Assembly: GCF_003704095.1 (NCBI RefSeq) | Contig: NW_020846693.1 | Coordinates: 186,001-250,000, forward strand | DNA: 64,000 nucleotides | From: Pocillopora damicornis | Taxonomy: Eukaryota | Direction: 5' to 3' | Shown: positions 246 through 51,261 of the stretch, in pieces | Layout: each line of letters begins with the position of its first letter | How positions within the stretch are numbered: position 1 is the stretch's first letter | Program-made: the position numbers and the translations under genes | Notes under the pieces: model-generated | Database searches by the model: none | What the model saw: the letters and a program-made list of their open reading frames with translations, nothing else | What the model was told of the DNA's origin: nothing

Positions 246-2950
246 CTGCCAATGATGTTTGTCAACAAAAAGAAACAATGATTGCGATGGATTGCTAAGG
301 ATCAAACCAGTGTGCTCCTTTCTGGTCAAAAGTCGTAGCAACTGTTTCTCGTAGTCGTGGTTTTCAAATTCAAACTTGCCCTAGAGATAACAGCCAAACA
401 AACCTAACATCAATTCAGTTGTGGGTGAGGAGAGTAAAAAATATTGCAAATTACAAATAAATCTACATTAGAAACAGTTATATTCAGGGGGGGTCTTCTC
501 TTACATTTGTACTCCCACCCTATCCTTACATTTTGGATAATATTACAAAACTTCACCTGAATGAGTCTATATTCAGAATTTTCCTCCCCTTTCCATCGTG
601 AAAACAGCAGACATACTATCTTGTCAATGTCATTGCGAGGCCACAAAAAGAAATCAATTTCCTGCACACATCCAATGACATCCTAGGAAATGATCAAAAG
701 ATAAATGTTACCCACCTTTGACAAGTATGGTACAAAGGGTTACAAGCTTTTTGTTTATTCCATAATTCTATAAAAAATCCAATCTGTGCAAAGCTTCATT
801 TTTAAGGACAATTTAAGGTTCCGTTGGGACAAATGTGTATCCCACAAATGAATTTAGGAAGTTGGATAGAATGCACCTATTAAAATTAATTAACAAGGCC
901 TAGCTAACACACAGTCTAACTTAGAGTTTCATACTTTTCTTAAACACTGATATCTTGGAGCATGAAGTTGAACAATGTCTTTCTCCAACAGCTGTTGTGA
1001 GCTCTCAAGGGAATACACCTCTTCCTTCAAAAGAAAATATATTATCTACTTGTAAAACTCTTACAATTATCTTTGCATTTAAATAGGAAGCTTCAAGCTG
1101 GTATTTTCTCTGTCTCCTATGGAATTCACTAGCTCTTCACTCTTAAACCAGATAGGGGCTGCTGTGTAATTTAAGTTGACCCTTTAACTATGATGAGTGA
1201 CTAAGATAGAATTTCTCTATACATTAACAACGTAAAATCAATAAATGAGAATAAAGAAAAATTTAATTTAGGAGATTATTAGTTTAACTAACATCATAAG
1301 AATAGTTAGGAGAATTACTCGTATGGTCTTGGGAGCAGAAGGGTTAAATGCACTACGATGCAGCTTCCAGAGAACAAAAGACCACTCTAATGACTGATTT
1401 ATCAGACTATAATAATTATATATATGTACAATTTATGTGTGAGAACTTAACTAAACTGTCACTCTTAAGAAACCAGGGCAAATGGCAAATTTAACTGTTG
1501 TACTCATTTCCTATCCCTCATCAGCACTAGCATAAACAAACGTTTATTTTCACCTTGACACCTTTTAAGATGCTGTCTTCATAGTTATTTGTCATCACTG
1601 GGATCACCTCTGCCACTTCAAACAATGCAGACTTCTTCTTCTGTAACAAATAACATTGACTACTTTTAAGAGGACTAGTGCTTTCACATGTGCATTTCTT
1701 TCAGTGGGTGGGTACTTGCATCAACAGCCCCAGTTGTTTGAAGATCGGATAATGCTATCCACTGGATAAATCTCTATCCAGTTGATAACGCTATACATTT
1801 TGCTATCACTTATCTACTGGATAGTGATTTATCTGTCCGATAGAATTGTCCACTGTTTACACAACTGGACCCAGGATGGTAAAGAGTCCAACTACTGTAG
1901 CTAATAAGTTGGTAAAAACACTAGGAAGTTAAGAGCAATCAAACAATATGAAAACAAAATCCTAGCGATTTAAAGTTGACTCCTTGTGTATTGAATTGTC
2001 CATAAACACTTTGGTTTTGGGGGAGTTGAGGTTTTGGAAGATGGGAAGAAAAACAAAAGGCATGTTTTACTTACAGCTGTAAAGATAATTATTGCTTTAT
2101 CATTCTAACTATGCAGAAAGTGTTCCACTACATCAATGTTTAGATAAAAACCATGAGGTGATCAACAGTTCTGAAGGGAATACAGCAATATGTGCTGATA
2201 TACCCCTTCCAGTTATTAAAGGTACAATTTTGAGGAAAGTGACCTCAAGAGAAATATTACTTTAAAATGGGCAGGTATTGTTTTGAGTGGTGGAGGGTGA
2301 GAGTTCTTGACTCCTGGCTCTGAGGAGCAATCAACAGGAGTAGAAAGGATATACATTTGAGCCCTATTAAATCCTGACTTTTTATTCCTTTATTTATTCT
2401 GAGGTTCACTTTTTTATGTCAATTTAAAGTGAGAATCACTCATACTGAATATAGACTTATCACATTTGTAATCAAAATACTCACATCTGTATACTATAGC
2501 AATAACAATTCTAGTATGATCGTTTCATAAATCATAAAAAAATTACACTATTCATTTTGATTAGTGTTTTGTGCTCCAATGTTTTCGTTAGATCAAATTT
2601 TATTTAACATTATTACAGACTAATTTTCAAACTTTGTGATAACCAACAACATTCGAACTTGCAATCTCAATAGAAGATAACTATTGAACCACAAAACAGT
2701 ACGAATAACTTAATGTATATGAAGAGTGTAATAGAAACCTTTTTACGACGGTGAAATTGCGTGAATTGTTAATAAAATCCACTTATTTATTACTATATCT
2801 GCCACTAAATAATTTGCTTACCTTATCTTTAAAAACCACTGCAAAGTACATTTTGAAGTCAAATTGCTCGGCCAAAGATTCCCGTTTTCGTCGCAGTTGC
2901 GATCGCAACCGGTTGAGCGTTGCTGATTTCCTGGAGGCAGGGTCAGCCAT
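246..2950 (-). CDS. C6orf62: C6orf62 homolog (uncharacterised conserved protein), 5 exons visible, last exon(s) left of the window
   Basis: GT-AG exons 2822-2950, ~1554-1640, ~935-1024, ~557-682, 246-380 splice to [133 protein letters not shown]..., which I recognise as closely matching vertebrate C6orf62. Confidence 0.9.
1176..1347. repeat. Short MITE-like element (TTAACCCTT...AAGGGTTAA family)
   Basis: Starts ttgacccttt, ends gaagggttaa; internal gagtgactaagatagaatttctc resembles the reverse complement of the end of the copy at 61087-61292. Confidence 0.5.
1726..1874. mobile_element. Palindromic MITE in a C6orf62 intron
   Basis: Imperfect terminal inverted repeats (ccccagttgttt ... acacaactggaccc) with internal tatcca/tggata repeats. 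Confidence 0.65.
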
Positions 2951-35697: not shown

Positions 35698-38600
35698 TCA
35701 CTGATATGGATCTGTCTTGAGGTCTACAGTTCTCCGCTTTCGCCAGCAACGAAGACACATAATCACAATCAGATCAACGAATTCACACAAAGTCAGCAGA
35801 CTACAGCCGAGAAATAATCCCATGTTACCTCCTACGTCCGCTAGAGAGGAAAACAGACAACAAAAATTATTCATATAATATTTATATATTGTAATGGAGC
35901 TCCTCCATCGCTGCGGAGGCCCATGTCCACGAAAATATGCCAACTTGTGAACCCAACCCTTAGATTTGGCTGTTACGTGATGTTTGTACGTTTTGTATTC
36001 GTATGCGCGACAGTGATACAGATATCATTCTCCGGCAACTCATGGCGCCAGTCTGCGCCTCAATGAATGTGCGCTTGCTGCAAGTTCTGTAAGGAAGACA
36101 CCGTCAGCCAATGTATTCCTTTACCAAGATATGTTTGAGTTCAGAACGTAACTAGAAACATTACTCACATCCAAAATCATTAAAATCATACGCGGGTTTC
36201 TCCCTCGTGACTTCAGTGTCCAGACTTTCGTAGTAAATGTTTACTTGAGCCATTCTTTGCCTACGGATGTAACGATACAAAAACATCTGGAGGTTTGGTC
36301 AAATAAGTACGTCGCATAGTACTTAAGCTTAATTGAAAACTTTTCATAAGAACTCCGTACAGCGTTCAGTACGAGACTTCTGTATCGTGCGACTATCAAA
36401 CTTTACCATCTTATTCTAATGATAACATTTTTATTTGTATGAAGTTTTAATGAAGTCCTTGAAAACATCTCTTCAGTGATAAAGATCGAACTATGCCCCA
36501 AACGCTTTGAAGTAAGTCTGGACTGACACTCACACAAAAAACCTTCACCGACGGGCAGGTCTGGTTGGAGTACAAGTATCCAATTATGTTTTGTGGTATT
36601 CAAGATTCTTGATTTTAGGACTCCCGGAAGTAAGAATGTAATGTCGCGTTTGTTACCTGATGTAGTTCTGGAACTCGACAACTTTCTCTGTGTTATTAGT
36701 TGACATGTTGTACATTGGGAATATTGTCTCCCATAAGTGATTTGACGGAGCGTACGCCATGGAGGCCTGGACTTGATAGCGTATCTCCGTACATGGCACA
36801 GGGCAGGCACAACTATTTGGATTAAATTTACCTAAACAGAGAGGTAAGAGAGATTAAAGCATTCGTATACATTCCGTTGGGATAACCATATCGGAAGTTC
36901 TTATTCACCTGGGTGCATTTGAAATATGTTTTTTTGAACTGTGACACTACTTTGGGGAGTGTGGCGATAACGCTCTTCGGGAGCTAGTGATGTTTTGTAA
37001 AGATGTTTATTGTTTACCTCTGAGTTAGTGAAAGAGTGAGTGAGATGCGCGTTTCCTGATGTGTCAAAAGCTTTCACCTACCATATTTTGGGAAGACGCA
37101 GGTAAAGATTTCCTTTGCAGAGCAATATCTCGTTTTGTTCTCACCTGTTGGAATATTAAAATTTTTAACTTGAACATAAGTTTAACTCCTTATTTGATTG
37201 ATTACTTGATCTGTATCTCTCGGGGATTAGCATCATCTTAAACAGCATATTGCTTACCAAATGAAGGCATAGATAGCAGTCGACAACCGCACTCTTCATA
37301 GGTTATGTTGGTGTAACATTCCAATAGACATGCGTACTGTGAGTACATTTTGAAAGCTGCCAAGTTCTTGTCGCTGCAGGCGGATTTAAATGGCGCGGGA
37401 AGACTCACCATCTTAAATGACAATTAAAACTTGATCAGTGACATAATTATACATTGTAGTACATTGCGTAATTTGGGCATTGCTGATCGTAGCGATCTGT
37501 AGGACACAGGACATGGGTAACACATTGCTTAGCTCAGTGAGATGTCTGGAAGGTAAAGAAGGCTTAGTCCTCTATACAGGAAACTTGGTTGTACCAACCT
37601 TGCTTCTGCGCACGCGTATGTTTGTGGTAAACCCTGGAGTAATATCCAAAGCGAGGTCTTCAATGTTTGGATACAAGTCCTTCTGATCATGAATCAGAAT
37701 CTTAAAACCTGTTGCGTCGTAGCTGTATGGCCCGTAATACTCTTCGGGTTGTGCATCCAAGTAAAGTGACAAGGCTTGCACTTTTCCTGATGTTGTCACA
37801 TAAAGCTTTTGGTGACCCCGCTGATCAGAATTAAACGTATAGCACACCCCCCGCTGTAAGCAGAAAAATCGTGTTATTTACATAGTGAAATAGTCTAGAT
37901 CATTTTCTCCTCTTTCCCTCTCTTCCTCAAAAATGCACTCAATGGTTCTCTTATAGCAACAAAAGCAAACGATTTCACCCAGTTGTAGGTAGAAAATCCT
38001 TTTATTTTCTCAGTCTTAGGAAAAACTGACTGACGTAGAATAGTTCTTTTTGTATCTGTAAAAGCTTTTTTTTTACCCTGTAAATCCTTTGTTGTTTTGC
38101 GGAATAAAAAACAGAGAACAAATGTTAACACACGAGATCATAGACAAGAATGAGCTTCAATTAAAAAAATTTATTACCCTTTAAAATACTAATGCGGAAT
38201 GCTAGTGACACTTCGTCAACTGGAGAGAAACCACTCTGTTGGAAGGAATTCATAAACCAATAAGCTAATCACAAAATTTATAAACCTCACCATGAAAGAA
38301 ATAAAAGAGGAGAAGTTAGCAGAAGTGCATGGTTGATTTTTCCACTCGCAGTCTTTCATCATCTCAGATAGGTTGTGACCGTGCTTCATCACACTCTCCC
38401 CAGGATCAAAGTCAGGGCTCGTCTTTTCTTCCAAGAGTTTATTCCCCAAGATATGCAACTTTACATGATCTTGTTGGTCTAGAAATGTTTGCGCGTCTGT
38501 TCCCAAAATTTTACTTTTTCGCATCATATTCTGGTTGCAAATAGTAATTGCAGGGTACAAAAGCTTCTCAGCATGTTCAATATCTTTGCCAATGACGCTT

Positions 38601-38863
38601 TCGTAACTTCGTAATTTGCGCCAGTTGTCTCGAAACTGGAAGAACAGAGCACATATACCCAGGGAAATCAATGTGATCCAAATAATCCTTCGTATCCGGG
38701 AGGCAGAGTCCAGGACAAAATGAAAACCGTGCAGGGTGGTATAGCCGCTGAAGTCTTTGATAACACGCGTAGCTTCATCTGTTTCTGATTTCCATACTTC
38801 CTTTACTTCTTTCACGCAGTTATCTCTTTTCTGTTGTACTGCTTTTAATTCTTCCATTTCCAT
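35698..38863 (-). CDS. DEG/ENaC (acid-sensing ion channel-like) subunit, 7 exons
   Basis: Exons 38291-38863, 37599-37853, 37258-37411, ~37082-37144, ~36657-36831, ~36169-36260, 35698-~35841; TTLHG gating motif, TM1, YPAITICNQN, G.CYTFN, G.KILIH.Q, Cys-rich thumb (C.CPVPC), TM2 FGSDVGGNMGLFLGCSLLTLCEF. Confidence 0.92.
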
Positions 38864-41813: not shown

Positions 41814-44643
41814 AAAATTAAAAATGGACGGGTTGTCGAATTATTCAAGAAAAAATTAAAGTCAGTCGAATCTCTAATTGATCAGAAAAACGATCTGTTT
41901 TCATTTTGTCACAAGTTCGTTTGTTCATGTCATTTTAGCGAACAGGTACTGATTTTTTTTTTCAATTCTTTACGGTTATTTTTTTCACTCGCAGCGTTAA
42001 AAAGAGACCTGCTATCAAACCCACGTAAGTATCTGCCATTTGCCAAAACTGCTCCTCCAATGATAGTAAGAGGCTTGATATCACCTCTTTTAAATTGAGT
42101 AAATAAAATACTGTTTGAATCCTATTAAAAATGATCTAGCTACAGCCTTCAATTAATGCTCAAAATCAAAATAAATTTTAAAAAAATCATATGACTATCC
42201 CTCACACATTATGGATAGATGAATAAAATATTTTGGCGGCTTCACCGCTCAGGAAAATTGTGCTGAGCAAAATAGCCTGCGTTTAATCGTAAACACTTCC
42301 TTTAGGCCGAGATAATTTGGCTTGAAGTTTTAATTAAAAAAGACTGCATCGGAAATTACTCAGATTTTCCTGCTCATAGCATTTGTTTTTGACAAAAAAT
42401 TTAAATGAAAATGGGCTAATTTTAGTGTGGCCTTCACGTATGTTATACACCACATACCAAAAACAGAAATTAATTTCTTAGTTACTTACGACAAACAAAC
42501 AACAAACGAGCTCTCTAGTCGTTTTGTGAACCTTTAATTTCACGTAACGAAGAGGGACTGATACACGTCAAAATCAGTTGGATTAAAATAAAAATGAGCT
42601 AATTAATGCAACAAGTAATACACTACGAAGAACTCGGTTGAAATTTAAACTTTTAAAAACAGGTCCAAGGCTATGGCGTAGCATTTCCACTTTTAGTAGG
42701 TTTCATTTACAGTGTAAACAATACAGTCTGTCTTGTCGCACCCTTTTTAAATGCAACAAGTAATACAAAATGACCATTCAGTGAACTACACAATCAATAA
42801 CATTTTTTGGGGCTTGGAAATAGTTCGAATAATATTGATTAAATGCCGCCGGGGCTGAACTTGCTGTGTACAGGCAACAACATTTATCAGAGAGAAAAGA
42901 AAGGTTTTTTGATTGTTCCCGACTAAACCCAGTGTGTTTGAATGATACACTATCAAGCTATAGGGGCTTTTTTTCTCGGAGTGTTATGATTGTTAGTCAA
43001 GGATAAACATAATAAATCAGAACTTGAATGATTGTTTTTTTGAGGAGACTCCAACACAATGAAATTACGCCTGGCAAGGATGTAACGACTTCAGTAATTC
43101 AAGTCAGGGCCGTTGTGTTTTAACCATGGCACGTAGCTTGGGCATGCGTCTATGTGTGTTTTCAATTGGTGAAGAAGAGAAGGCGAAGGTGATTGGCAAT
43201 TTCAAAAGGATTCCTTACGTTCAGTGACCAGAGCTATCAAATTTCATCCACTGCCTTAACTTTGTGTCCAAAGCTTTGCAGTCTATCGAATGATCACAGT
43301 GTCTGACACGCTTACATGCTGCCAGCTTCAGGTTCCTTTCGTTTTTCGCAATTAAGCCAGTCGGCGAGGGGTCCAAGAGCAGACTTATTGAAGCTGGTTT
43401 GTCAACAGAGGGAAAATTCAAGCCATCTCACCCGCTGACCCTGTAAATAAGGAATCAATTATTGATCAAATCAGTAAATGTTGTGGCAACTACATGGTCG
43501 TTCGTGAATTAAAGGAAATTTTACCAATCGATTTTAACACTATACCCTATGGGCCTCATAATAGCTACGATATGCGCAAATAGCGTTTCCTACATTGTAT
43601 GCAAGCAGTTCCCCCTGCAGGAGTAGGACAGGCCCGAGACTGAGGAGATTTCAAGCAGCTTCCGACAACAACGACGACGACTACTCGAACATGTGAATGT
43701 CCGCAAACATGCGCAACATGTGCAATGGTCGTTACGAGCATGCACCGTGACTCTGAAAAAGGCTAAAACCCAAAACTCATCGTCCAGTGTCAACCAGGCC
43801 TAGGAGTTGAAATTTCTTCTTAATAGCTTTAAACATCCGTCGTATTTTCCCTGGCTTTCGAGAGAAGCCTAAAATATCATTTGTCTCTGCTAACTCTGTT
43901 ATTTTATCTCAGTCAAGTTTATATATTACGTGACTCGACCAAATTTAGTGTGTTGTACTTAGGTATCCGAAATACAAACCTTATTCTCAACCTCGATCTT
44001 GAGCTTAGCTCACCAAGCTGCTCTACTTTCTTAACTCTCATAAGGTCACCACAACTCCATATAATCTGCGTCTTAAGCAATCGAGACATCCAGCGATCTT
44101 TTATTGAAAGGTTAGTACAAAATTTAATTGTCTCAATACCTTTCTCCTTAATATCTTTTATAAGAGAATCTCCGGTTTGAATATTTTAATTGTACCCCAA
44201 CGTTACTGTGGTCTTACCCTCAAAATCAGTTGTTTCCGCGTTCCGGACCCATGTGGCGCTTTGTAAAATTCTAATCTAAAGTGTCTAAAATTAAAGTGAA
44301 TAGCGGTATGAATAATAATCCCCAGGAAACGGAAAACGTAGGAGGAAATTTCCACGTGGTCGACACGTTGAAGCTATCAAACTCAACTTCAATAAAAATT
44401 CAATCTGTTGACATGTAAATTGAAGTCACAAATCTATTCAATTATTACGACTCACGGACACTTTTTGCCGGCCTAGTTAGTAGGGTAACCGATAGCGAAA
44501 TCGGAAGAACTGCGGTTTGAATCCTGCTCACGTGGGACTTAGCTTTGTTCCTTCGTCCTGCGTCAGTAATTTTATTGTATTCAATACAACTATCAAACTT
44601 TGAACCATGTTGGTGACATGCCATCGTATAGAATTGCCCAGCG

Positions 44644-44651
44644 TATATAAA
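44644..44651 (+). promoter_or_regulatory. TATA box of neuropeptide precursor gene 1
   Basis: TATATAAA about 90 bp upstream of ATG 44736. Confidence 0.55.
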
Positions 44652-44735
44652 GAGTACTTTAAATAGTTTTCAGATTTAAACCACTGTAAAGCATACGTCA
44701 GGTCTTCTACTGAACTTTTCGAAGAAGAAAGAACC

Positions 44736-45450
44736 ATGAAGAGGTCTCTAGTCTGTTTAATGGCTGTTTTCTGCCTTTGCTTTCAACTTACGCTCTGTCA
44801 GTTAAGCGTTTCCCTACCGCATGGACGAAGTTTTAATCCTGGATCTTTTGTCCACAAGGTAAGTTTAAACACCTCTAAGTACTAACATACTTTGGCGCTA
44901 ATTAGATTTCCTCTTGTTAAATTAATTCCTTCCGTGCCCATGAAGTGGTAAACTTTTTGCAAATCGGAAGCTTGTAAGACTGGCAACTCGAAACAATATA
45001 TTATATGCAACGAATCGCTTTACTTTCACCCAAATTCCAAGGCTTAAAAAATGAATTCTGCTTTCGAGAACTTTTGGTTCAGTCTTGATACTTTTTTCCC
45101 GTCTTTTTTTCATCCCTCCAAAACCTGACCCTAATATTTCATTTCCCAATTATTTTGTTCTCTTTTTTTGGGTGGAGAATTAAATAGTCTGCTTATTTCA
45201 CCACATTTTCCTGAAAGATCGTACATTCCACGTAAGGATTTTTTTTACTAACAAACACCTTCGTTTCATCTTTTAGAAAACTGTAGGAAATGACGAAAAG
45301 AGAGGCGCAGACTACATGAACAAATATGAGAGGACCCCGGGAGAATATGAGGCAAGACCAGTCCACCGCTTGGGAAAAGCTCTGCACAGTTATTTCAACA
45401 GTGTTTCCAGTGGACGAAACTTCGCAAGAGACGCTGATAATGATAACTAG
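44736..45450 (+). CDS. Putative neuropeptide precursor 1 (98 aa; predicted pGlu-LSVSLPH-amide)
   Basis: Exons 44736-44858 (AAG|gtaagt) and 45277-45450 (ttttag|): MKRSLVCLMAVFCLCFQLTLC-QLSVSLPH-GR-SFNPGSFVHK|KTVGNDEKRGADYMNKYERTPGEYEARPVHRLGKALHSYFNSVSSGRNFARDADNDN*; upstream TATA, AATAAA at 45535. Confidence 0.75.
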
Positions 45451-45923
45451 ATTCCTCAAGTTAGGAAGATTGTAATCCACATGTAACCTTATAGTTAATT
45501 ATAGTTACTACAGTGAAAACTGATTGAAATGAGAAATAAATATTTTAAATTGAAGTGAAATCACGATGAGTTGTATTTACAGCGGGGTCAGTTCAGTTAA
45601 ACACTGATAAGCAGAAAATGTTTGATCAGCCTGTCGTCCGGACTTCCATTAAATCTACTATCAATCTTTGAAACTCTACAATTGTTTTAAAATTTTATAA
45701 CTGCATGATGGTTGCGTATCGGGTGGGGGGGGGGGGNNNNNNNNNNNNNNNNNNNNNNNNNNNNNNNNNNNNNNNNNNNNNNNNNNNNNNNNNNNNNNNN
45801 NNNNNNNNNNNNNNNNNNNNNNNNNNNNNNNNNNNNAATTAATACATGCGTGTAAATTTAAAGAGGATCGCATCGTGGAAGCGTTCAAACAGACTTAAGT
45901 TTTCGTTGCGTGAAGATCTAAAA

Positions 45924-46527
45924 ATGTTTTGTGGTCTAAAATTGTCCTGTTGTTGGTTGGTGTGTTGTGTTCTTGTTGTGCTTCAGGTTCAGTTCACATC
46001 TGGTCAACTTGCACATAATTTTTATGCTGGCCGCTCGATCGTCTCTGATTCAGCATTCAACAAGGTATGATTGTTTCAAGGTTTTTTACTATTAGCGTCA
46101 GCAAACTGTCCAATCAGTTGTAATAACGAGAGAAAGTCAATGGGTGGGGTGGGTAAGGCTGCGTCGACTGAGATTCTGAACATGCAAAGAAAGGATTTCA
46201 TGTTTATTTGAATTGTAACATTTTGGAAATATTTTCAACAAATTGAACTACGCCTCGGCAGGCAAGCAGAATGCTTAACAGTACTGAACATTCTAACACA
46301 AAACTAACGATAATGTATTCGAACATTTAGCTTAGCTTGAAAGACCGACAATAAATAATTATTTCACTTGCCTTTTATGATTTTAGGAACCCCTAAAAGC
46401 TGAGGTAAAGGAAGTGAAAGAATTGGCCGATATTCCACTTGAAAAGAAAGCAAGATCCAGTAATGAAAAACCGTTTTACCAGCTTTTCAACACCTTGAAG
46501 ACCCGAAGAGCTCCAGTTCTTGAATGA
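45924..46527 (+). CDS. Putative neuropeptide precursor 2 (93 aa; predicted pGlu-LAHNFYA-amide)
   Basis: Exons 45924-46064 (AAG|gtatga) and 46387-46527 (ttttag|): MFCGLKLSCCWLVCCVLVVLQVQFTSG-QLAHNFYA-GR-SIVSDSAFNK|EPLKAEVKEVKELADIPLEKKARSSNEKPFYQLFNTLKTRRAPVLE*; AATAAA at ~46671. Confidence 0.75.
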
Positions 46528-47190
46528 AACTACAACACAAACCGTTTCTGACCCGAGCCGTCACCGAGCAAAGTCATACCTCGATAGCGAGTCATAAAAC
46601 TTTTCTTGTTGTATTTGTAATATCATAGCCCAGAAAAATGTTGACCTTCTTTATTTTCAGATTATTCTGGTAATAAAATGAATATTATGCAAGCTATAAT
46701 ATGTTTTCTGGTTAAACATAGTTTTTAACATCTTCTGTCCAACAAGAAAACTGCTCTCATTCATTGAAACTGTTTGAAAGAGCCACCATGGTGTAAAATG
46801 TTTTGAGTCATAAAACTCGTATGTCGACTCTTGAACCTGGGCATAACAGAAAAACACGAACTTAGAATAAGTGATATCAAAGCATATAGGAAGACAAGGA
46901 GAGAGATTTCTTCGGATTACAAAAGACGCATTGCGGCAGTTAAAAAAAATTGGATTAATGCGAAGTATGATTTTCACATTAAGATTAATAAGAGCGTATC
47001 GCTTATCAGATACTTCCAAGAACACGAATTGTTCAAATTAATTGTTTTGAACTGCGTCAGCTCAAACGACATGTCTAACTTTGAAGTTACTCGTCGAATT
47101 GAGTGGGAACATAATTCAGGGATGTCTCAATTAGGAACATTTTTACTTGAACAGAAGAAGATAAAAAAAGGGTGGGTAAAAAATGCCCCT

Positions 47191-47301
47191 TGCTCCCGGG
47201 GGGGCTCGAACCCCCGACCTTCGCATTACTTCAGCACCCTCGGCGCCAAACGCCTTTACTGCTTATAAGTACGACGCTCTAACCGACTGTGCTACGGGAG
47301 C
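47191..47301 (-). tRNA. tRNA-Ile (anticodon TAT) with ~37-nt intron
   Basis: GCTCCCG/CGGGAGC-A acceptor stem, TAGCACAGTCGGTTAGAGC D arm (A box), CT-TAT-A anticodon loop then intron, GGTTCGAGCC T arm (B box), downstream T-run terminator. Confidence 0.92.
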
Positions 47302-47464
47302 TTGGGTTGGTGGGAAGGGTGTAGTTTACATAATTATTACAAGATTCCCTCGGCCGGAACTTAAAAACTTGCGTAAAACTGGTACCTAACATTGAGAAAA
47401 TATGGCGGTTCTCGTAGTGGTGAACTTCTAAAAGCCATCCCTGAAAGAGACATCTGAACCCGCA

Positions 47465-50400
47465 ATGTCGGATCATTTTTACTTGTTTGCTGGTTTAGGA
47501 AGCGCTGCTGTATCAGCTTTATTCTATGGTGTGTACAAAAACAGGGAAGGTGCCATACGAAGCTTGCAGGTTCGTGCGTGTTCTATCTTGCGTTTCTGTC
47601 TATAATTCAGACCGGTTTCGCTTGAGATTTTTCTATATGATTCTTTGTAAATCAATAACATGAATGTCCTTTTATCCAAGGATTAAAATTTTTGTGATAT
47701 AGACAAAGGTTTCCTCAAGTTTTGAGACCGTACGATCTTTCCAACAACAAAAAGAACGAAAAAATGATTCGATTGCATTATGTACTTCTGAGCTTCAGGG
47801 AACTTTGACACCCCATTTAGGAATCTTATGTGTCTTTTTTTGTTACATAAGTATGTCGACACAGGTGAAGGAAATGATGGGACTCTTTGAAGTTATTCTG
47901 ACTGTGTAGGACTTTTCCTTGCCGATCAATTAGGCTACTGACCCTTACCAAGATCTCGCCCCACCACGCTTCCTTTCTTTACAATTCCAGTGTGGCCCAA
48001 GGCCTCTGTTTTACCACCGTGATCTTGATCGCTAGTCTAAAAATTTACCTATAATAATTAAGTTAGGTTACCAGGAAGAAATTTGGAAGACTGCACCCAG
48101 TTAAATCATGATGACCCTGTTGAAATTTCTCCTGGTAACATTAACTCAGCTGAATCTTAGCTCATATCTCGTCTAAATTTTAAATATGAACAGACGTCTC
48201 AAGGGTCAGCCTAATCACCAAACTAATATCTAGGGGCCATTTGGAACTGACTGAAGGTGTACATCTTCTAGCATAAAATTATGGATAAGGTATAACAATA
48301 TCACACCCCTGAATGAAACATGAAGGCCACAAGAATAAAGGAAATGATCACCAACCAAAGAAACTCTAGATTGTGAAACAAATTTTCCTAGTCAGCACTG
48401 TACGCATTCCAGTGAGGAGAATATGCACACTGATGTCAGGGTGTAAAGGGTTAATGATGGACACCCGGGACCCCATAACTTAAGTTCTGTTTTTCAATCT
48501 TGGCTAGGTCATTTTTTTGTGTTCTTGAGCCAAACACTTAACTCTGACAAAGTCTCTCCATTCAGGAGTATGAATGGGTACCACAAAACTGTGGGGGAAG
48601 CTTGTTCAATTACATTGGTATAACCTGCAATGCTTATGAATGCTTTGGTTTTATTCAGAATGCAGTAGAATTTGAAATTGGATCACAACTGAGGAATGCC
48701 CTTTTGGCCTCTGACACCCACTCAATACCTTATGGTGTTATCAGAGGAGAGACAAAGCCTCAGAAATCTAATGAGGTGATCAGAAGTTCTCATGTTGCAG
48801 ATGTTACTGGAGTCATGCAGCGTGTCAGAACACGTGAACATAAGAGTGAATGGAGTCGAACAACAAGGCTGTGGTAGGAAACAATAATGATAATGATGAT
48901 GATGATGATAATACATGTTCTTGTAAAATTGTGCAATGATGACTCACTTGATATTTTGGTGCAGCACAACATCAAAAAGCCTTGTTGATGTATTCGGTTC
49001 TTTTAATAGTTGAATTAGTTTTTTAAAACATAAACTGAACACAATTTTAAACTGTTTTCCAAACATATAAAAATCTATTTTCAAAGTGTTCAGATATTGT
49101 AATAAAGGTTAAGGTTACAAAAATGCCAAGTTGTTGTGTCCATGTGTGCCTGTTGACCACATGTTCTCTCTGCAGTAAGCATGTTTTGACATGCTTGCTG
49201 TAAAGAGAACTTGTAGTCAGTGGTAAAAGACAGAATCATGACCAAAGTTTGAGTTTTCTTAATACAGGGTGCATGCTAAATTTGAGGTTCATTTTATGCT
49301 GGTTTCACTGTACACACTGATCCAGATATTGTAATAAATGTTTAGGGTTACAGAAGGGCCAAATTTTCTTGTCCATGTATGCTGCTGACTAACATGCATA
49401 CTGCTAAGAGAACTTTTAGTCAGCAGTTAATGACAGAATCACAACCTAAGTTAGGGTTACAAAAGAGCTAAGTTTCTTTGTCCATGTGTGCTTAAAAGAC
49501 ATGCCTGCTGACTATTAACATGCTTTCTGTGAAGAGAACTTGTAGTCAGAAGACAGTACAATTCTAGAAGACAGAATCGTGACCTGAGTTTGAGTTCTCC
49601 TCATGACGACTTCAACACGGACAAAGTGGGTAATTCTGTGAACCCCACTCAAGTGGGGTTCGTGCATATGTATGAGCACTGTTACTCAGTAACGCATGAC
49701 GTATTTTACGTCATGTTCCACTGAGAGTCTTAGATGGAAGCTGTGTAGTAAAACTTGTTTGGATGCTGTCAGAGAAACTAGGATAGATCGAGAAATTCAA
49801 AGTGAACTTTGTTAAATTAATTATTATTTATTTTGTAGTTGGTGTTTTGACCATAATTTGGAAAGCTTTGTTTGCTAAGTGGATAAAGATAAAGCAGATG
49901 TTGTTTAGAAAATGGTTTTTAACTTTGAAATTCTTAAAGATTTTGTCTTTGAATGATTATGCAAATTCAAGTTTGAAATTGAAGCAAACCGTGATTTGAG
50001 CTTTTTGTTTACACAAGTTTGGGTGATATTTAAAAGTAAAAGCTGGTCTTCTTTAAGTGAAGACATTGTTCACTGAAGGGAAAGGTTTCTTCGCTTTCTT
50101 TTCCGATCCAGCAATGTTTGATCCCTGATCTCTTGTGGATCACAAATGCGGCCATTCCACTCTGCATTCCAGCTGTCAAAGGACAGAATCATTGTCTACT
50201 TCTTCAACAGCCCATGCACACCAAACTCCTCCTTCATCGACTGCTTCAGCTTTGAAGCCCACAGTTTGTGGAAGTGCCATCATGTTTTTAGTCAACTGTG
50301 CATTTAACTCATGCGATCAAAACAGGTTTGCAATCAATAAAGCTGGCCAATTTGTTTTGATGAATCTGCAAGCAGTCACAAGGATACTAAGTGGTGTCCA

Positions 50401-51261
50401 GTATCCCTGGGTAATTTTAGCATCTCATTGCACATGTGTTCATTAAAACCAGAATTCTTAATTAATTGCACACTTTGTCCATGTTGAAGTTGTAATGTAA
50501 TACAGGTGCATGCTCAATTTGGGGTTTATCTTATGCTGGTTTAACTTTTTGTATCCACTTACAGGCATGACATGGAGAGAACTATCAGCTCAGCATCATC
50601 TTCAGTTCCATTCTGTTTGTTTAGAAATGGTGACTGTGTTAATGTCATGGAACCGCTGTCAGCTGAACAACTTACCCTCAAAGTTATTCATGACAAGTTT
50701 GAACCAGTTAGTAGCTCGGTGGCAGAGTCCTTAGTACAGTGGGCCAGTGGTGACAAGACCAAAGGCTTCCAGACAATTGAACAGATGTTACCAGTTGGTA
50801 CAACTCTCACTGGAATTGGAGAAATCACACTTACTGATGATGGCATCAAGATAGGACCCCCAAAATCTGGTCTGACTTATTATCTATCTCAATTCACATT
50901 AGATGCTATTGTGAGACAGCTGCAGTCAGGAAAGAAGGTTTGGAAAATCTTGAGTGCCATCTTTGCCTTTGGAAGTGGCATATTGTTCTTGGTGTCCCTG
51001 TTTCTTTATTTCAAGAGACGGCGTGACAGGGAAGTGGAACTGGACTTGATGCGGAGAATGCGAGAGGAGGTGAATGTTTTGGGTGAGGGTGAAGTATTAG
51101 ATCAGCAAGAAGCCTGTGTTATTTGCATGGACAGACAGCGCAATGTTGTTATTTTAGACTGTGGCCATATTTGTTGCTGTATAGACTGTGCTCAACGGGT
51201 CAACAACTGCCCTGTGTGTCGCCGTGTTATTGCAAGGTTGATTCCCACATTCAATAGTTGA
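47465..51261 (+). CDS. MUL1: Mitochondrial ubiquitin ligase activator of NF-kB 1 (MUL1/GIDE), 3 exons
   Basis: Exons 47465-47569, ~48659-48873, ~50564-51261; N-terminal TM, PYGVIRG, SVPF.L, GFQTIEQML.VGT.LTGIGEI, YYLS, second TM, C-terminal RING CVIC..R.RNVVILDCGHICCC..CA.....CPVCR. Confidence 0.9.
49091..49600 (+). repeat. Three degenerate tandem copies of a 150-230-bp unit in MUL1 intron 2
   Basis: ggttaca...gtccatgt...aagagaactt.tagtcag...gacagaatc recurs at ~49110, ~49345, ~49453. Confidence 0.7.
50070..50283 (-). pseudogene. Frameshifted Tudor/MBT-like domain fragment antisense in MUL1 intron 2
   Basis: MMALPQTVGFKAEAVDEGGVWCAWAVEEVDND[frameshift]ILSFDSWNAEWNGRICDPQEIRDQTLLDRKRKRRNLSLQ*. 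Confidence 0.4.

What the first reader, a model, noticed from the sequence alone, without database searches (positions are those of the whole stretch)
44736..46527. Tandem pair of paralogous neuropeptide precursors encoding pGlu-Leu-x6-amide octapeptides (AKH/GnRH-like architecture)
Seen in sequence: two adjacent two-exon + strand genes, neither shown intact in the ORF track, have identical geometry. Each has a Cys-rich hydrophobic leader ending Q-(L/F)-T-x-(C/G), then Q-L-x6, then G-R, then exactly 10 residues (S...K), a phase-0 intron and a polar second exon. The second exons carry dibasic sites and a shared FN(S/T)(V/L) motif (ALHSYFNSV vs PFYQLFNTL). Both have consensus splice sites and a downstream AATAAA; gene 1 has a TATA box. 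Established: N-terminal Gln cyclises to pyroglutamate, and Gly followed by a basic residue is the convertase/carboxypeptidase E/PAM amidation signal. A single peptide directly after the signal peptide is the layout of the bilaterian AKH/corazonin/GnRH superfamily, whereas the classic cnidarian RFamide and GLWamide precursors are multi-copy. Inference: the products are pQLSVSLPH-NH2 and pQLAHNFYA-NH2, a locally duplicated family with conserved processing frame but divergent active sequence. I do not recognise either peptide, but single-copy pGlu/amide precursors may already be catalogued in sea anemones, so novelty must be checked.
Basis: partly seen in the sequence, partly recalled or inferred. 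Interest (0 to 1): 0.9.

Follow-up and report, generated by a model that had tools for sequence, protein, structure and literature searches.

The report
Two conserved coral secreted-peptide precursor genes
Two small neighbouring genes in this stony-coral genome are real, spliced and conserved across several coral families, and they look like precursors of short hormone-like peptides missing from published coral catalogues, though a link to insect AKH or vertebrate GnRH is not supported.

Summary
Both two-exon genes exist exactly as drawn. RNA contigs from three to four independent studies carry the GT..AG joints 44859-45276 and 46065-46386, and gene 2 ends in a poly(A) tail. The N gap (45737-45836) lies between the genes and touches neither coding sequence. 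Pocillopora meandrina has an annotated 93-aa protein that matches the gene 2 model.

The same tandem pair, followed by a MUL1-like E3 ligase gene, occurs in Pocillopora, Desmophyllum, Oculina and one unnamed coral contig. A second unnamed source carries the pair without that flank, and Cyphastrea contigs carry gene 2 only. In all 15 sequences, the only family-wide signal-peptidase site is followed by Gln-Leu/Ile. Gly plus a basic residue comes 8-13 residues later, and a phase-0 intron follows.

The best reading is secreted pGlu...amide peptide precursors, probably neuropeptide or hormone genes. They have the single-copy layout already known from cnidarian Antho-RWamide genes.

- The peptide cores are no better conserved than their flanks.
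- Gene 1's peptide varies even within Pocillopora.
- The AKH/GnRH motifs are absent.

Neuronal expression and the mature peptides remain untested. I class this as a new member of a known kind, of moderate interest.

The parts
44644..44651 (+). TATA-like box of gene 1
   Evidence: TATATAAA read. RNA contig 5' ends lie at 44652-44693. Contigs cannot fix the true start site.
44736..44798 (+). Gene 1 predicted signal peptide (21 aa, ends ..LTLC)
   Evidence: The n-region is MKR and is followed by a hydrophobic core. C21|Q22 is the only (-3,-1) site just after the hydrophobic core that all gene-1 relatives share. SignalP was not available.
44799..44828 (+). Gene 1 predicted peptide Q22-H29 plus the Gly-Arg amidation and cleavage signal
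   Evidence: Codons 26-28 differ in all four RNA runs and in P. meandrina: S26Y, L27R and P28S.
44859..45276 (+). Gene 1 intron (phase 0)
   Evidence: The GT..AG joint skipping 418 bases is present in RNA contigs of X2, X7 and X10.
45277..45450 (+). Gene 1 exon 2 coding part (57 aa plus stop)
   Evidence: It aligns with exon 2 of relatives through the motif G-x-D/E-E-x-R-x-A-x-Y. An ORF fragment of it is present in Logan/ENA assemblies (P0002).
45535..45540 (+). Gene 1 AATAAA
   Evidence: RNA contigs end at 45521-45555.
45737..45836 (.). Assembly gap, intergenic
   Evidence: It lies between the 3' end of transcript 1 and the 5' end of transcript 2. In P. meandrina the aligned flanks are about 794 bases apart, so the true gap is probably longer than 100. 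The letters were not read or filled.
45924..46004 (+). Gene 2 predicted signal peptide (27 aa, ends ..QFTSG)
   Evidence: G27|Q28 is the only family-wide (-3,-1) site. The last 10 residues are 83-92% identical across species.
46005..46034 (+). Gene 2 predicted peptide Q28-A35 plus Gly-Arg
   Evidence: It is invariant in four RNA runs. Q-L and G-R-S are invariant in six species.
46065..46386 (+). Gene 2 intron (phase 0)
   Evidence: The GT..AG joint skipping 322 bases is present in X1, X2, X7 and X10. The same splice is implied by the annotated P. meandrina protein P0001.
46387..46527 (+). Gene 2 exon 2 coding part (46 aa plus stop)
   Evidence: It has KK and RR sites and the L-F-N motif shared with relatives.
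46672..46677 (+). Gene 2 AATAAA
   Evidence: The X2 contig ends at 46696 with a loose run of A.
50572..51258 (+). Last exon of the MUL1-like E3 ligase, the conserved downstream neighbour (synteny anchor, not part of the peptide genes)
   Evidence: Pfam GIDE 5.9e-27 and zf-C3HC4_3 3.7e-14. The same gene follows the gene 2 ortholog in L006, L007, L008 and L010.

Best explanation
The locus holds two tandem, probably paralogous genes for small secreted peptide precursors (98 and 93 aa) of a stony coral.

Proposed mechanism:
- The signal peptide is cut just before a Gln.
- The new N-terminal Gln cyclises to pyroglutamate.
- A convertase cuts after the basic residue that follows Gly.
- The exposed Gly is converted to a C-terminal amide.

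In this genome the products would be an 8-residue pGlu-Leu-...-His-amide from gene 1 and a pGlu-Leu-Ala-His-Asn-Phe-Tyr-Ala-amide from gene 2. The rest of each precursor is disordered, carries further basic sites, and may give additional peptides.

Shown: transcription, splicing, polyadenylation, conservation of the reading frame, the intron phase, the processing frame, and the gene order across at least four families of robust corals. Inferred: the cleavage site, the two end modifications, the secretory route, and the peptidergic (neuronal or endocrine-like) role.

The layout is that of known cnidarian single-copy preprohormones such as Antho-RWamide, but the sequences form two families of their own.
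For: Transcripts and both introns are seen in RNA contigs from four studies, and gene 2 has a poly(A) tail.

The gene 2 model equals a 93-aa annotated protein of P. meandrina (98% identical over the 47-aa exon 1; the full-length sequence matches the model). Orthologs were found in Desmophyllum pertusum, Oculina patagonica, Cyphastrea sp. and two unnamed coral sources.

Gene-1-like genes lie directly upstream of the gene 2 ortholog in five of those sources. There are one or two copies per source, and they have the same exon structure.

All 15 exon-1 sequences share the same frame. Gln follows the only shared (-3,-1) site, Leu or Ile is at +2, Gly plus Lys/Arg comes 8-13 residues later, and a phase-0 donor follows.

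The gene 1 and gene 2 exon-1 profiles match at probability 81% and 49% (E 1.3e-5 and 1.7e-4). This genome's Antho-RWamide-2 precursor scores about 1% against either.

No folded domain is predicted. AlphaFold pLDDT is below 50 beyond the leader, and there is no Pfam hit.

The nearest language-model neighbours of P0001 are mostly peptide-hormone precursors, at scores of 0.85-0.89. This is a lead only.

The genome carries PAM-type monooxygenase and proprotein-convertase domains.

The published catalogue of coral preprohormones required three or more similar copies, or a known peptide as query. It would therefore miss such genes.
Against: There is no peptide-level evidence and no cell-type evidence, so neuronal expression is assumed.

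The predicted peptide cores are not the best conserved parts. In gene 2 the end of the signal peptide is far more conserved. In gene 1, exon 2 is more conserved than the peptide.

Gene 1's core carries clustered amino-acid changes within Pocillopora. Its coding divergence from P. meandrina (7/297, five of them non-synonymous) is about the intron rate. That fits weak constraint or diversifying selection better than a conserved transmitter.

The family was found only in robust scleractinians. Nothing was seen in sea anemones or complex corals, although the searches were weak for such short proteins.

Signal-peptide cleavage rests on a rule of thumb, not on SignalP.
Confidence: 0.6

Rival explanations
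1. The genes encode secreted peptides or small proteins with a non-neuronal role, for example gland or epithelial products used in defence, mucus, symbiont or microbe interaction, or calcification. The pGlu/amide ends would serve only as protection against exopeptidases.
For: Gene 1's peptide changes quickly, with clustered non-synonymous differences within Pocillopora, and it differs in length between corals. The family was seen only in stony corals. Both genes are readily assembled from whole-colony poly(A) libraries of four studies. Exon 2 is as conserved as the N-terminal peptide, or more so.
Against: The predicted peptides are short, have no cysteine and are nearly uncharged, unlike known cnidarian toxins or cationic antimicrobial peptides. 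The strict Gln...Gly-basic frame directly after the leader is the hallmark of cnidarian preprohormones (PMC7523074).
Confidence: 0.27
2. The functional products come from the second exons, for example the segment after the KK/KR site of gene 2 with the L-F-N motif, or the conserved start of gene 1's exon 2. The N-terminal pGlu peptide would then be a by-product or a pro-segment.
For: Exon 2 identity outside Pocillopora is 0.63 in gene 2 and 0.67 in the first 33 columns of gene 1, which is above the peptide cores at 0.49-0.51. Dibasic sites are conserved. A weak helix is predicted at residues 74-87 of P0001.
Against: Pocillopora's second exons are strongly diverged from those of other corals (21-39% identity), while Q-L and G-R-S never change. 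The Gly before the internal basic sites is not conserved: G46R in P. meandrina gene 1.
Confidence: 0.15
3. The two genes are cnidarian members of the bilaterian AKH/corazonin/GnRH superfamily.
For: They share the layout of signal peptide, a single pGlu peptide of 8-13 residues, Gly-basic, and an associated peptide. Progonadoliberin appears among the language-model neighbours at 0.85. Thiel et al. 2024 report a small anthozoan orphan receptor group with affinity to the GnRH/vasopressin receptor cluster (PMC11087051).
Against: There is no Pfam GnRH or AKH hit at E up to 1. The AKH positions Phe/Tyr-4 and Trp-8 and the GnRH His-Trp-Ser-Tyr motif are absent. Unrelated cnidarian precursors have the same layout. 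The atlas score is below the level at which shuffled proteins also score. Orthologs were found only in robust corals.
Confidence: 0.03
4. These are chance ORFs in non-coding transcripts.
For: The two Pocillopora proteins are not significantly alike. They have no Pfam family.
Against: The ORFs, the intron phase, the processing frame and the gene order are kept across corals whose gene 1 and gene 2 relatives are only 29-60% identical in exon 1. Gene 2's coding divergence is below the intron divergence.
Confidence: 0.02

Closest known systems
Antho-RWamide (LRWamide) single-copy preprohormones of Hexacorallia (Koch and Grimmelikhuijzen 2020, family #10)
   Same: There is one peptide per precursor, placed directly after the signal peptide. 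It has an N-terminal Gln that becomes pGlu and a Gly-Arg amidation signal. Several genes occur per species, and the family is present in P. damicornis. The Nematostella members activate GPCRs (PMC11087051).
   Different: There is no (L/I)RW C-terminus. This genome's RWamide precursor shows no profile similarity (probability 0.6-1%). It is uninterrupted over the 75 residues read, where these genes have a phase-0 intron 5-13 residues after the basic cleavage residue(s) (10 after Gly-Arg in Pocillopora).
Phenyllactyl-peptide preprohormones of sea anemones (Antho-RNamide, Antho-RIamide, Antho-KAamide)
   Same: They have a single copy directly after the signal peptide, and the N-terminus is blocked after signal-peptide removal.
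   Different: Those start with Phe, which is converted to phenyllactyl. They are tri- to tetrapeptides and were not found in Scleractinia.
Bilaterian AKH / corazonin / GnRH precursors
   Same: The overall layout and the pGlu/amide ends are shared.
   Different: None of the conserved core residues are present. There is no Pfam match. No receptor evidence exists. The layout is not diagnostic, because it recurs in unrelated families.

Membership tests
AKH/corazonin/GnRH superfamily | Single peptide directly after the signal peptide, with N-terminal Gln and a C-terminal Gly-basic signal | tested here: met
   The feature is predicted from sequence, and it is also met by unrelated cnidarian families.
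AKH/corazonin/GnRH superfamily | Conserved core residues: AKH has an aromatic at 4 and Trp at 8; GnRH has His2-Trp3-Ser4-Tyr5; corazonin has Phe3 and Trp9 (from general knowledge) | tested here: not met
   The cores read have no Trp at these places. Gene 1 of Pocillopora has no aromatic residue at all.
AKH/corazonin/GnRH superfamily | Match to the family profiles (Pfam GnRH, AKH) | tested here: not met
   No such family appears at E up to 1 for P0001, P0004, P0005 or the exon pieces.
AKH/corazonin/GnRH superfamily | Signals through a GnRH-receptor-type GPCR | not testable with these tools
   This needs receptor assays. An anthozoan orphan group near this receptor cluster is reported in PMC11087051.
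Antho-RWamide / LRWamide preprohormones | Peptide ends in (L/I/M)-R-W-amide | tested here: not met
   No R-W precedes the Gly in any of the 15 sequences.
Antho-RWamide / LRWamide preprohormones | Sequence kinship with the RWamide precursor of the same genome | tested here: not met
   hhalign probability is 0.6% and 1.0%.
Cnidarian single-copy pGlu/amide preprohormone (a kind, not a homologous family) | Signal peptide whose cleavage exposes the peptide's first residue | tested here: met
   By the (-3,-1) rule, this is the only site shared by all 15 sequences. SignalP was not run.
Cnidarian single-copy pGlu/amide preprohormone (a kind, not a homologous family) | Gly plus basic residue(s) right after a short peptide, conserved in orthologs | tested here: met
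   The Arg column is invariant in both families, and G-R-S is invariant in gene 2.
Cnidarian single-copy pGlu/amide preprohormone (a kind, not a homologous family) | Gene is expressed as a spliced mRNA | tested here: met
Cnidarian single-copy pGlu/amide preprohormone (a kind, not a homologous family) | Mature peptide detected, and expression in neurons | not testable with these tools
   No peptidomic or cell-type data could be linked to these genes. They are absent from the P. damicornis catalogue.

The most novel reading that the evidence does not exclude
The pair is an anthozoan peptide-hormone system whose pGlu/amide products are the missing ligands of the small anthozoan orphan GPCR group that Thiel et al. 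2024 place next to the bilaterian GnRH/vasopressin receptor cluster. That would make it a cnidarian counterpart of the GnRH/AKH/corazonin system that sequence comparison alone cannot recognise. A second, less ambitious novel reading is that gene 1's fast-changing peptide is a species-specific signal under diversifying selection.
Probability: 0.04. Interest if true: 0.85.

Novelty: new member of a known kind. Interest (0 to 1): 0.42.

Why it matters
Coral nervous and endocrine signalling is poorly charted. The published coral peptide catalogues were built to find multi-copy precursors or relatives of known peptides, so single-copy genes like these were missed.

If the predicted peptides exist, they add two families to the scleractinian repertoire. 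One is well conserved in its frame. The other evolves fast. They would provide synthetic ligands for receptor screens and for tests on polyp behaviour, settlement or spawning.

The conserved position upstream of the MUL1-like gene gives a simple way to look for the pair in any anthozoan genome.

Tried and rejected
- Direct blastp of the two Pocillopora proteins, exon by exon, showed no significant similarity. Only the family profiles show kinship.
- Exact-string literature searches for the peptides and their relatives found nothing relevant, only collagen papers.
- The weak own-genome hit C4130:80432-80521 has no start codon and is probably chance.
- Pfam gave only a sub-threshold conotoxin leader hit on the Cys-rich signal peptide of P0001 (E 0.11), which I rejected.
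- ARAGORN found no tRNA at 43500-48000, although tRNA-like words occur there.
- AlphaFold on a three-sequence alignment gave a low-confidence model (pLDDT 58). I used it only to say that no fold is evident, and ran no fold search.
For gene 2 the database protein P0001 served as the full-length stand-in.

Full report
**Observation**

- Gene 1 has a 41-codon first exon (44736-44858), an intron with GTAAGT and TTTTAG ends (44859-45276), and a 57-codon second exon that ends with a stop at 45448-45450.
- Gene 2 has a 47-codon first exon (45924-46064), an intron (46065-46386), and a 46-codon second exon that ends at 46527.
- Both first exons read hydrophobic leader, Gln-Leu, six residues, Gly-Arg, ten residues ending in Lys, and then a phase-0 donor.

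**Expression and the gap**

RNA runs that hold the stretch are labelled coral or marine metagenome. I laid contigs of four runs from four studies on 44500-46800.
- The joint skipping 418 bases (GT..AG) is present in X2, X7 and X10.
- The joint skipping 322 bases is present in all four runs.
- Transcript 1 covers about 44652-45555, just past the AATAAA at 45535-45540.
- Transcript 2 covers about 45879-46696 and ends in a run of A, after the AATAAA at 46672-46677.
- Run X1 also covers the introns and some intergenic DNA, so it probably contains unspliced RNA or DNA. I did not use it for transcript ends.

The N gap (45737-45836) therefore lies between the two transcripts, and neither reading frame depends on it. 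The in-frame ATG at 45846 lies upstream of the contig starts, so Met at 45924 is the likely start. I neither filled nor read the gap. I note only that the aligned flanks are about 794 bases apart in P. meandrina.

**Host and relatives**

The assembly has 234.35 Mb in 4393 contigs. From memory this fits Pocillopora damicornis, and the RNA labels agree with a coral.

A search with gene 2's first exon returned one protein, a 93-aa unnamed product of Pocillopora meandrina. Using that database protein as a full-length stand-in, I found the following:
- an 82-aa protein of Desmophyllum pertusum;
- an 88-aa protein of Oculina patagonica;
- two read-through ORFs from ENA assemblies.

A metagenome scan added contigs of a Cyphastrea sp. 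metagenome and of two ENA sets of unknown species (Cyphastrea identified through bioRxiv 10.1101/391565).

Gene 1's exons were searched separately. Only an ORF fragment of exon 2 turned up in the protein database.

**Conserved locus**

I fetched the DNA around the gene 2 orthologs. In Desmophyllum, Oculina, one ENA coral contig and P. meandrina, the gene is followed by a GIDE plus RING (MUL1-like) gene. The window has the same gene, with its last exon at 50572-51258.

tblastn then showed one or two gene-1-like genes immediately upstream of every gene 2 ortholog that had enough flank. This includes the unknown-species contigs L015 and L016. Every copy has the same two-exon structure, with a phase-0 donor after a Tyr/His-Lys motif and a clean acceptor.

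The tandem arrangement is therefore old. It is shared by at least Pocilloporidae, Caryophylliidae and Oculinidae. Cyphastrea (Merulinidae) contributes gene 2 only. All of these belong to the robust scleractinians.

**What is conserved**

Alignments A5-A8 and a rule-based scan show that, in all 15 first exons, the only (-3,-1) site shared across a family lies right before a Gln. Leu follows it (Ile once). A Gly plus Lys/Arg follows 8-13 residues later.
- In the gene 2 family the peptide reads Q-L-(A/T/S)-(H/Q)-N-(F/L) plus two or three variable residues, and Gly-Arg-Ser is invariant.
- In the gene 1 family most corals have a 12-13-residue peptide with a G-x-(V/L/H)-G-x-V core.
- The Pocillopora form is four or five residues shorter.

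By mean pairwise identity, the peptide cores (0.43-0.54) are not the best conserved parts:

| Region | Gene 1 family | Gene 2 family |
|---|---|---|
| Peptide core | 0.43-0.49 | 0.51-0.54 |
| Signal peptide | 0.57-0.65 (whole) | 0.83-0.92 (last ten residues) |
| Exon 2 outside Pocillopora | 0.67 (first 33 columns) | 0.63 |

The processing frame is strictly kept, but the core is not privileged.

**Variation within Pocillopora**

All four RNA runs and P. meandrina differ from the window in codons 26-28 of gene 1: S26Y, L27R and P28S.

Against P. meandrina, gene 1's coding divergence is 7 of 297 sites, five of them non-synonymous. That is close to its intron rate of 3.3%. Gene 2 has 2 of 282 against an intron rate of 2.5%. 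The counts are small, but they suggest that gene 2 is constrained and that gene 1 is relaxed or diversifying in this genus.

**Paralogy**

The two window proteins alone are not significantly alike. Family profiles of the first exons match at probability 81% (E 1.3e-5) and 49% (E 1.7e-4). The match runs through the end of the leader, (F/V)-Q-(Y/F)-(V/I)-(H/R)-(C/G), then Q-L.

As a control I located this genome's Antho-RWamide-2 precursor by a degenerate pattern. It scores 0.6-1% against either family.

The second-exon profiles are not alike. Taken with the shared intron phase and the conserved adjacency, an old tandem duplication is likely, at roughly 75%.

**Mechanism**

The best-supported reading is a pair of secreted peptide precursors processed in four steps: signal-peptide removal, Gln cyclisation, cleavage after the basic residue, and amidation of the peptide through the Gly.
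- The genome carries PAM-type monooxygenase and convertase P-domains.
- The precursor has no Pfam family and no predicted fold beyond the leader helix.
- Its nearest language-model neighbours are mostly peptide-hormone precursors, at scores too low to be more than a lead.

Cleavage, the end modifications and any neuronal role are inferred, not shown.

**Comparison with what is known**

Koch and Grimmelikhuijzen 2020 already describe hexacoral preprohormones with one peptide directly after the signal peptide, including two RWamide genes in P. damicornis. The layout is therefore not a bilaterian hallmark.

Their P. damicornis list does not contain these two genes. Their method needed three similar copies or a known query, which explains the omission.

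The AKH, GnRH and corazonin core residues are absent, and their Pfam profiles do not match. Thiel et al. 2024 report an anthozoan orphan receptor group near the GnRH/vasopressin cluster. That keeps a small door open, but it is not evidence.

**Verdict**

The genes are new members of the known kind of cnidarian single-copy preprohormones. The finding is useful for coral neurobiology but not surprising in principle.

Noticed in passing
window 44811-44819: There are four variable nucleotides within seven bases, all of them amino-acid changing, in the predicted gene 1 peptide. They appear across four RNA runs and in P. meandrina. The window's Leu-27 was seen in none of the four RNA runs or in P. 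meandrina.
   Followed up: partly
window 35698-38863 (- strand): A DEG/ENaC (Pfam ASC) gene lies head-to-head about 5.9 kb upstream of gene 1. It was not seen in the 5 kb upstream of the Desmophyllum pair, so conserved linkage is unproven. Any ligand-channel relation is untested.
   Followed up: partly
window 47187-47310 and 47443-47585: These stretches are conserved at the DNA level with Desmophyllum, Oculina and the ENA coral, with tblastx hits in all frames at 73-88% identity. They lie just upstream of the MUL1-like coding exons and are probably its first exon or UTR, or a conserved element. T-arm-like words occur there, but ARAGORN finds no tRNA.
   Followed up: no
G000 C4168:141788-141807 and 142974-142993 (L011, L012): Two nearly identical Antho-RWamide-2 precursor copies lie 1186 bases apart, and each runs into an assembly gap. 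This may be a real tandem duplicate or an assembly or haplotype duplication.
   Followed up: no
G000 C115:60208-60315 (- strand; L021): This is a weak third relative (E 0.007). It is a 41-codon first exon with a leader ending ..ETQG, then Q-L-T-H-N, a G-R-S-L, and a GTAAGT phase-0 donor. It has two Cys residues in the post-leader part. Its expression is unknown.
   Followed up: partly
window 1709-1876: A short element is shared, in several frames and both orientations, with unrelated positions of the Desmophyllum and ENA coral loci. It is probably a dispersed repeat.
   Followed up: no
L007:787-1917 and L007:4102-6014; L008:2591-3456 and L008:5466-6142: Oculina and the ENA coral each carry two gene-1-like copies. 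One copy has a basic-rich 13-residue peptide, so the gene 1 family has duplicated again in some lineages.
   Followed up: partly
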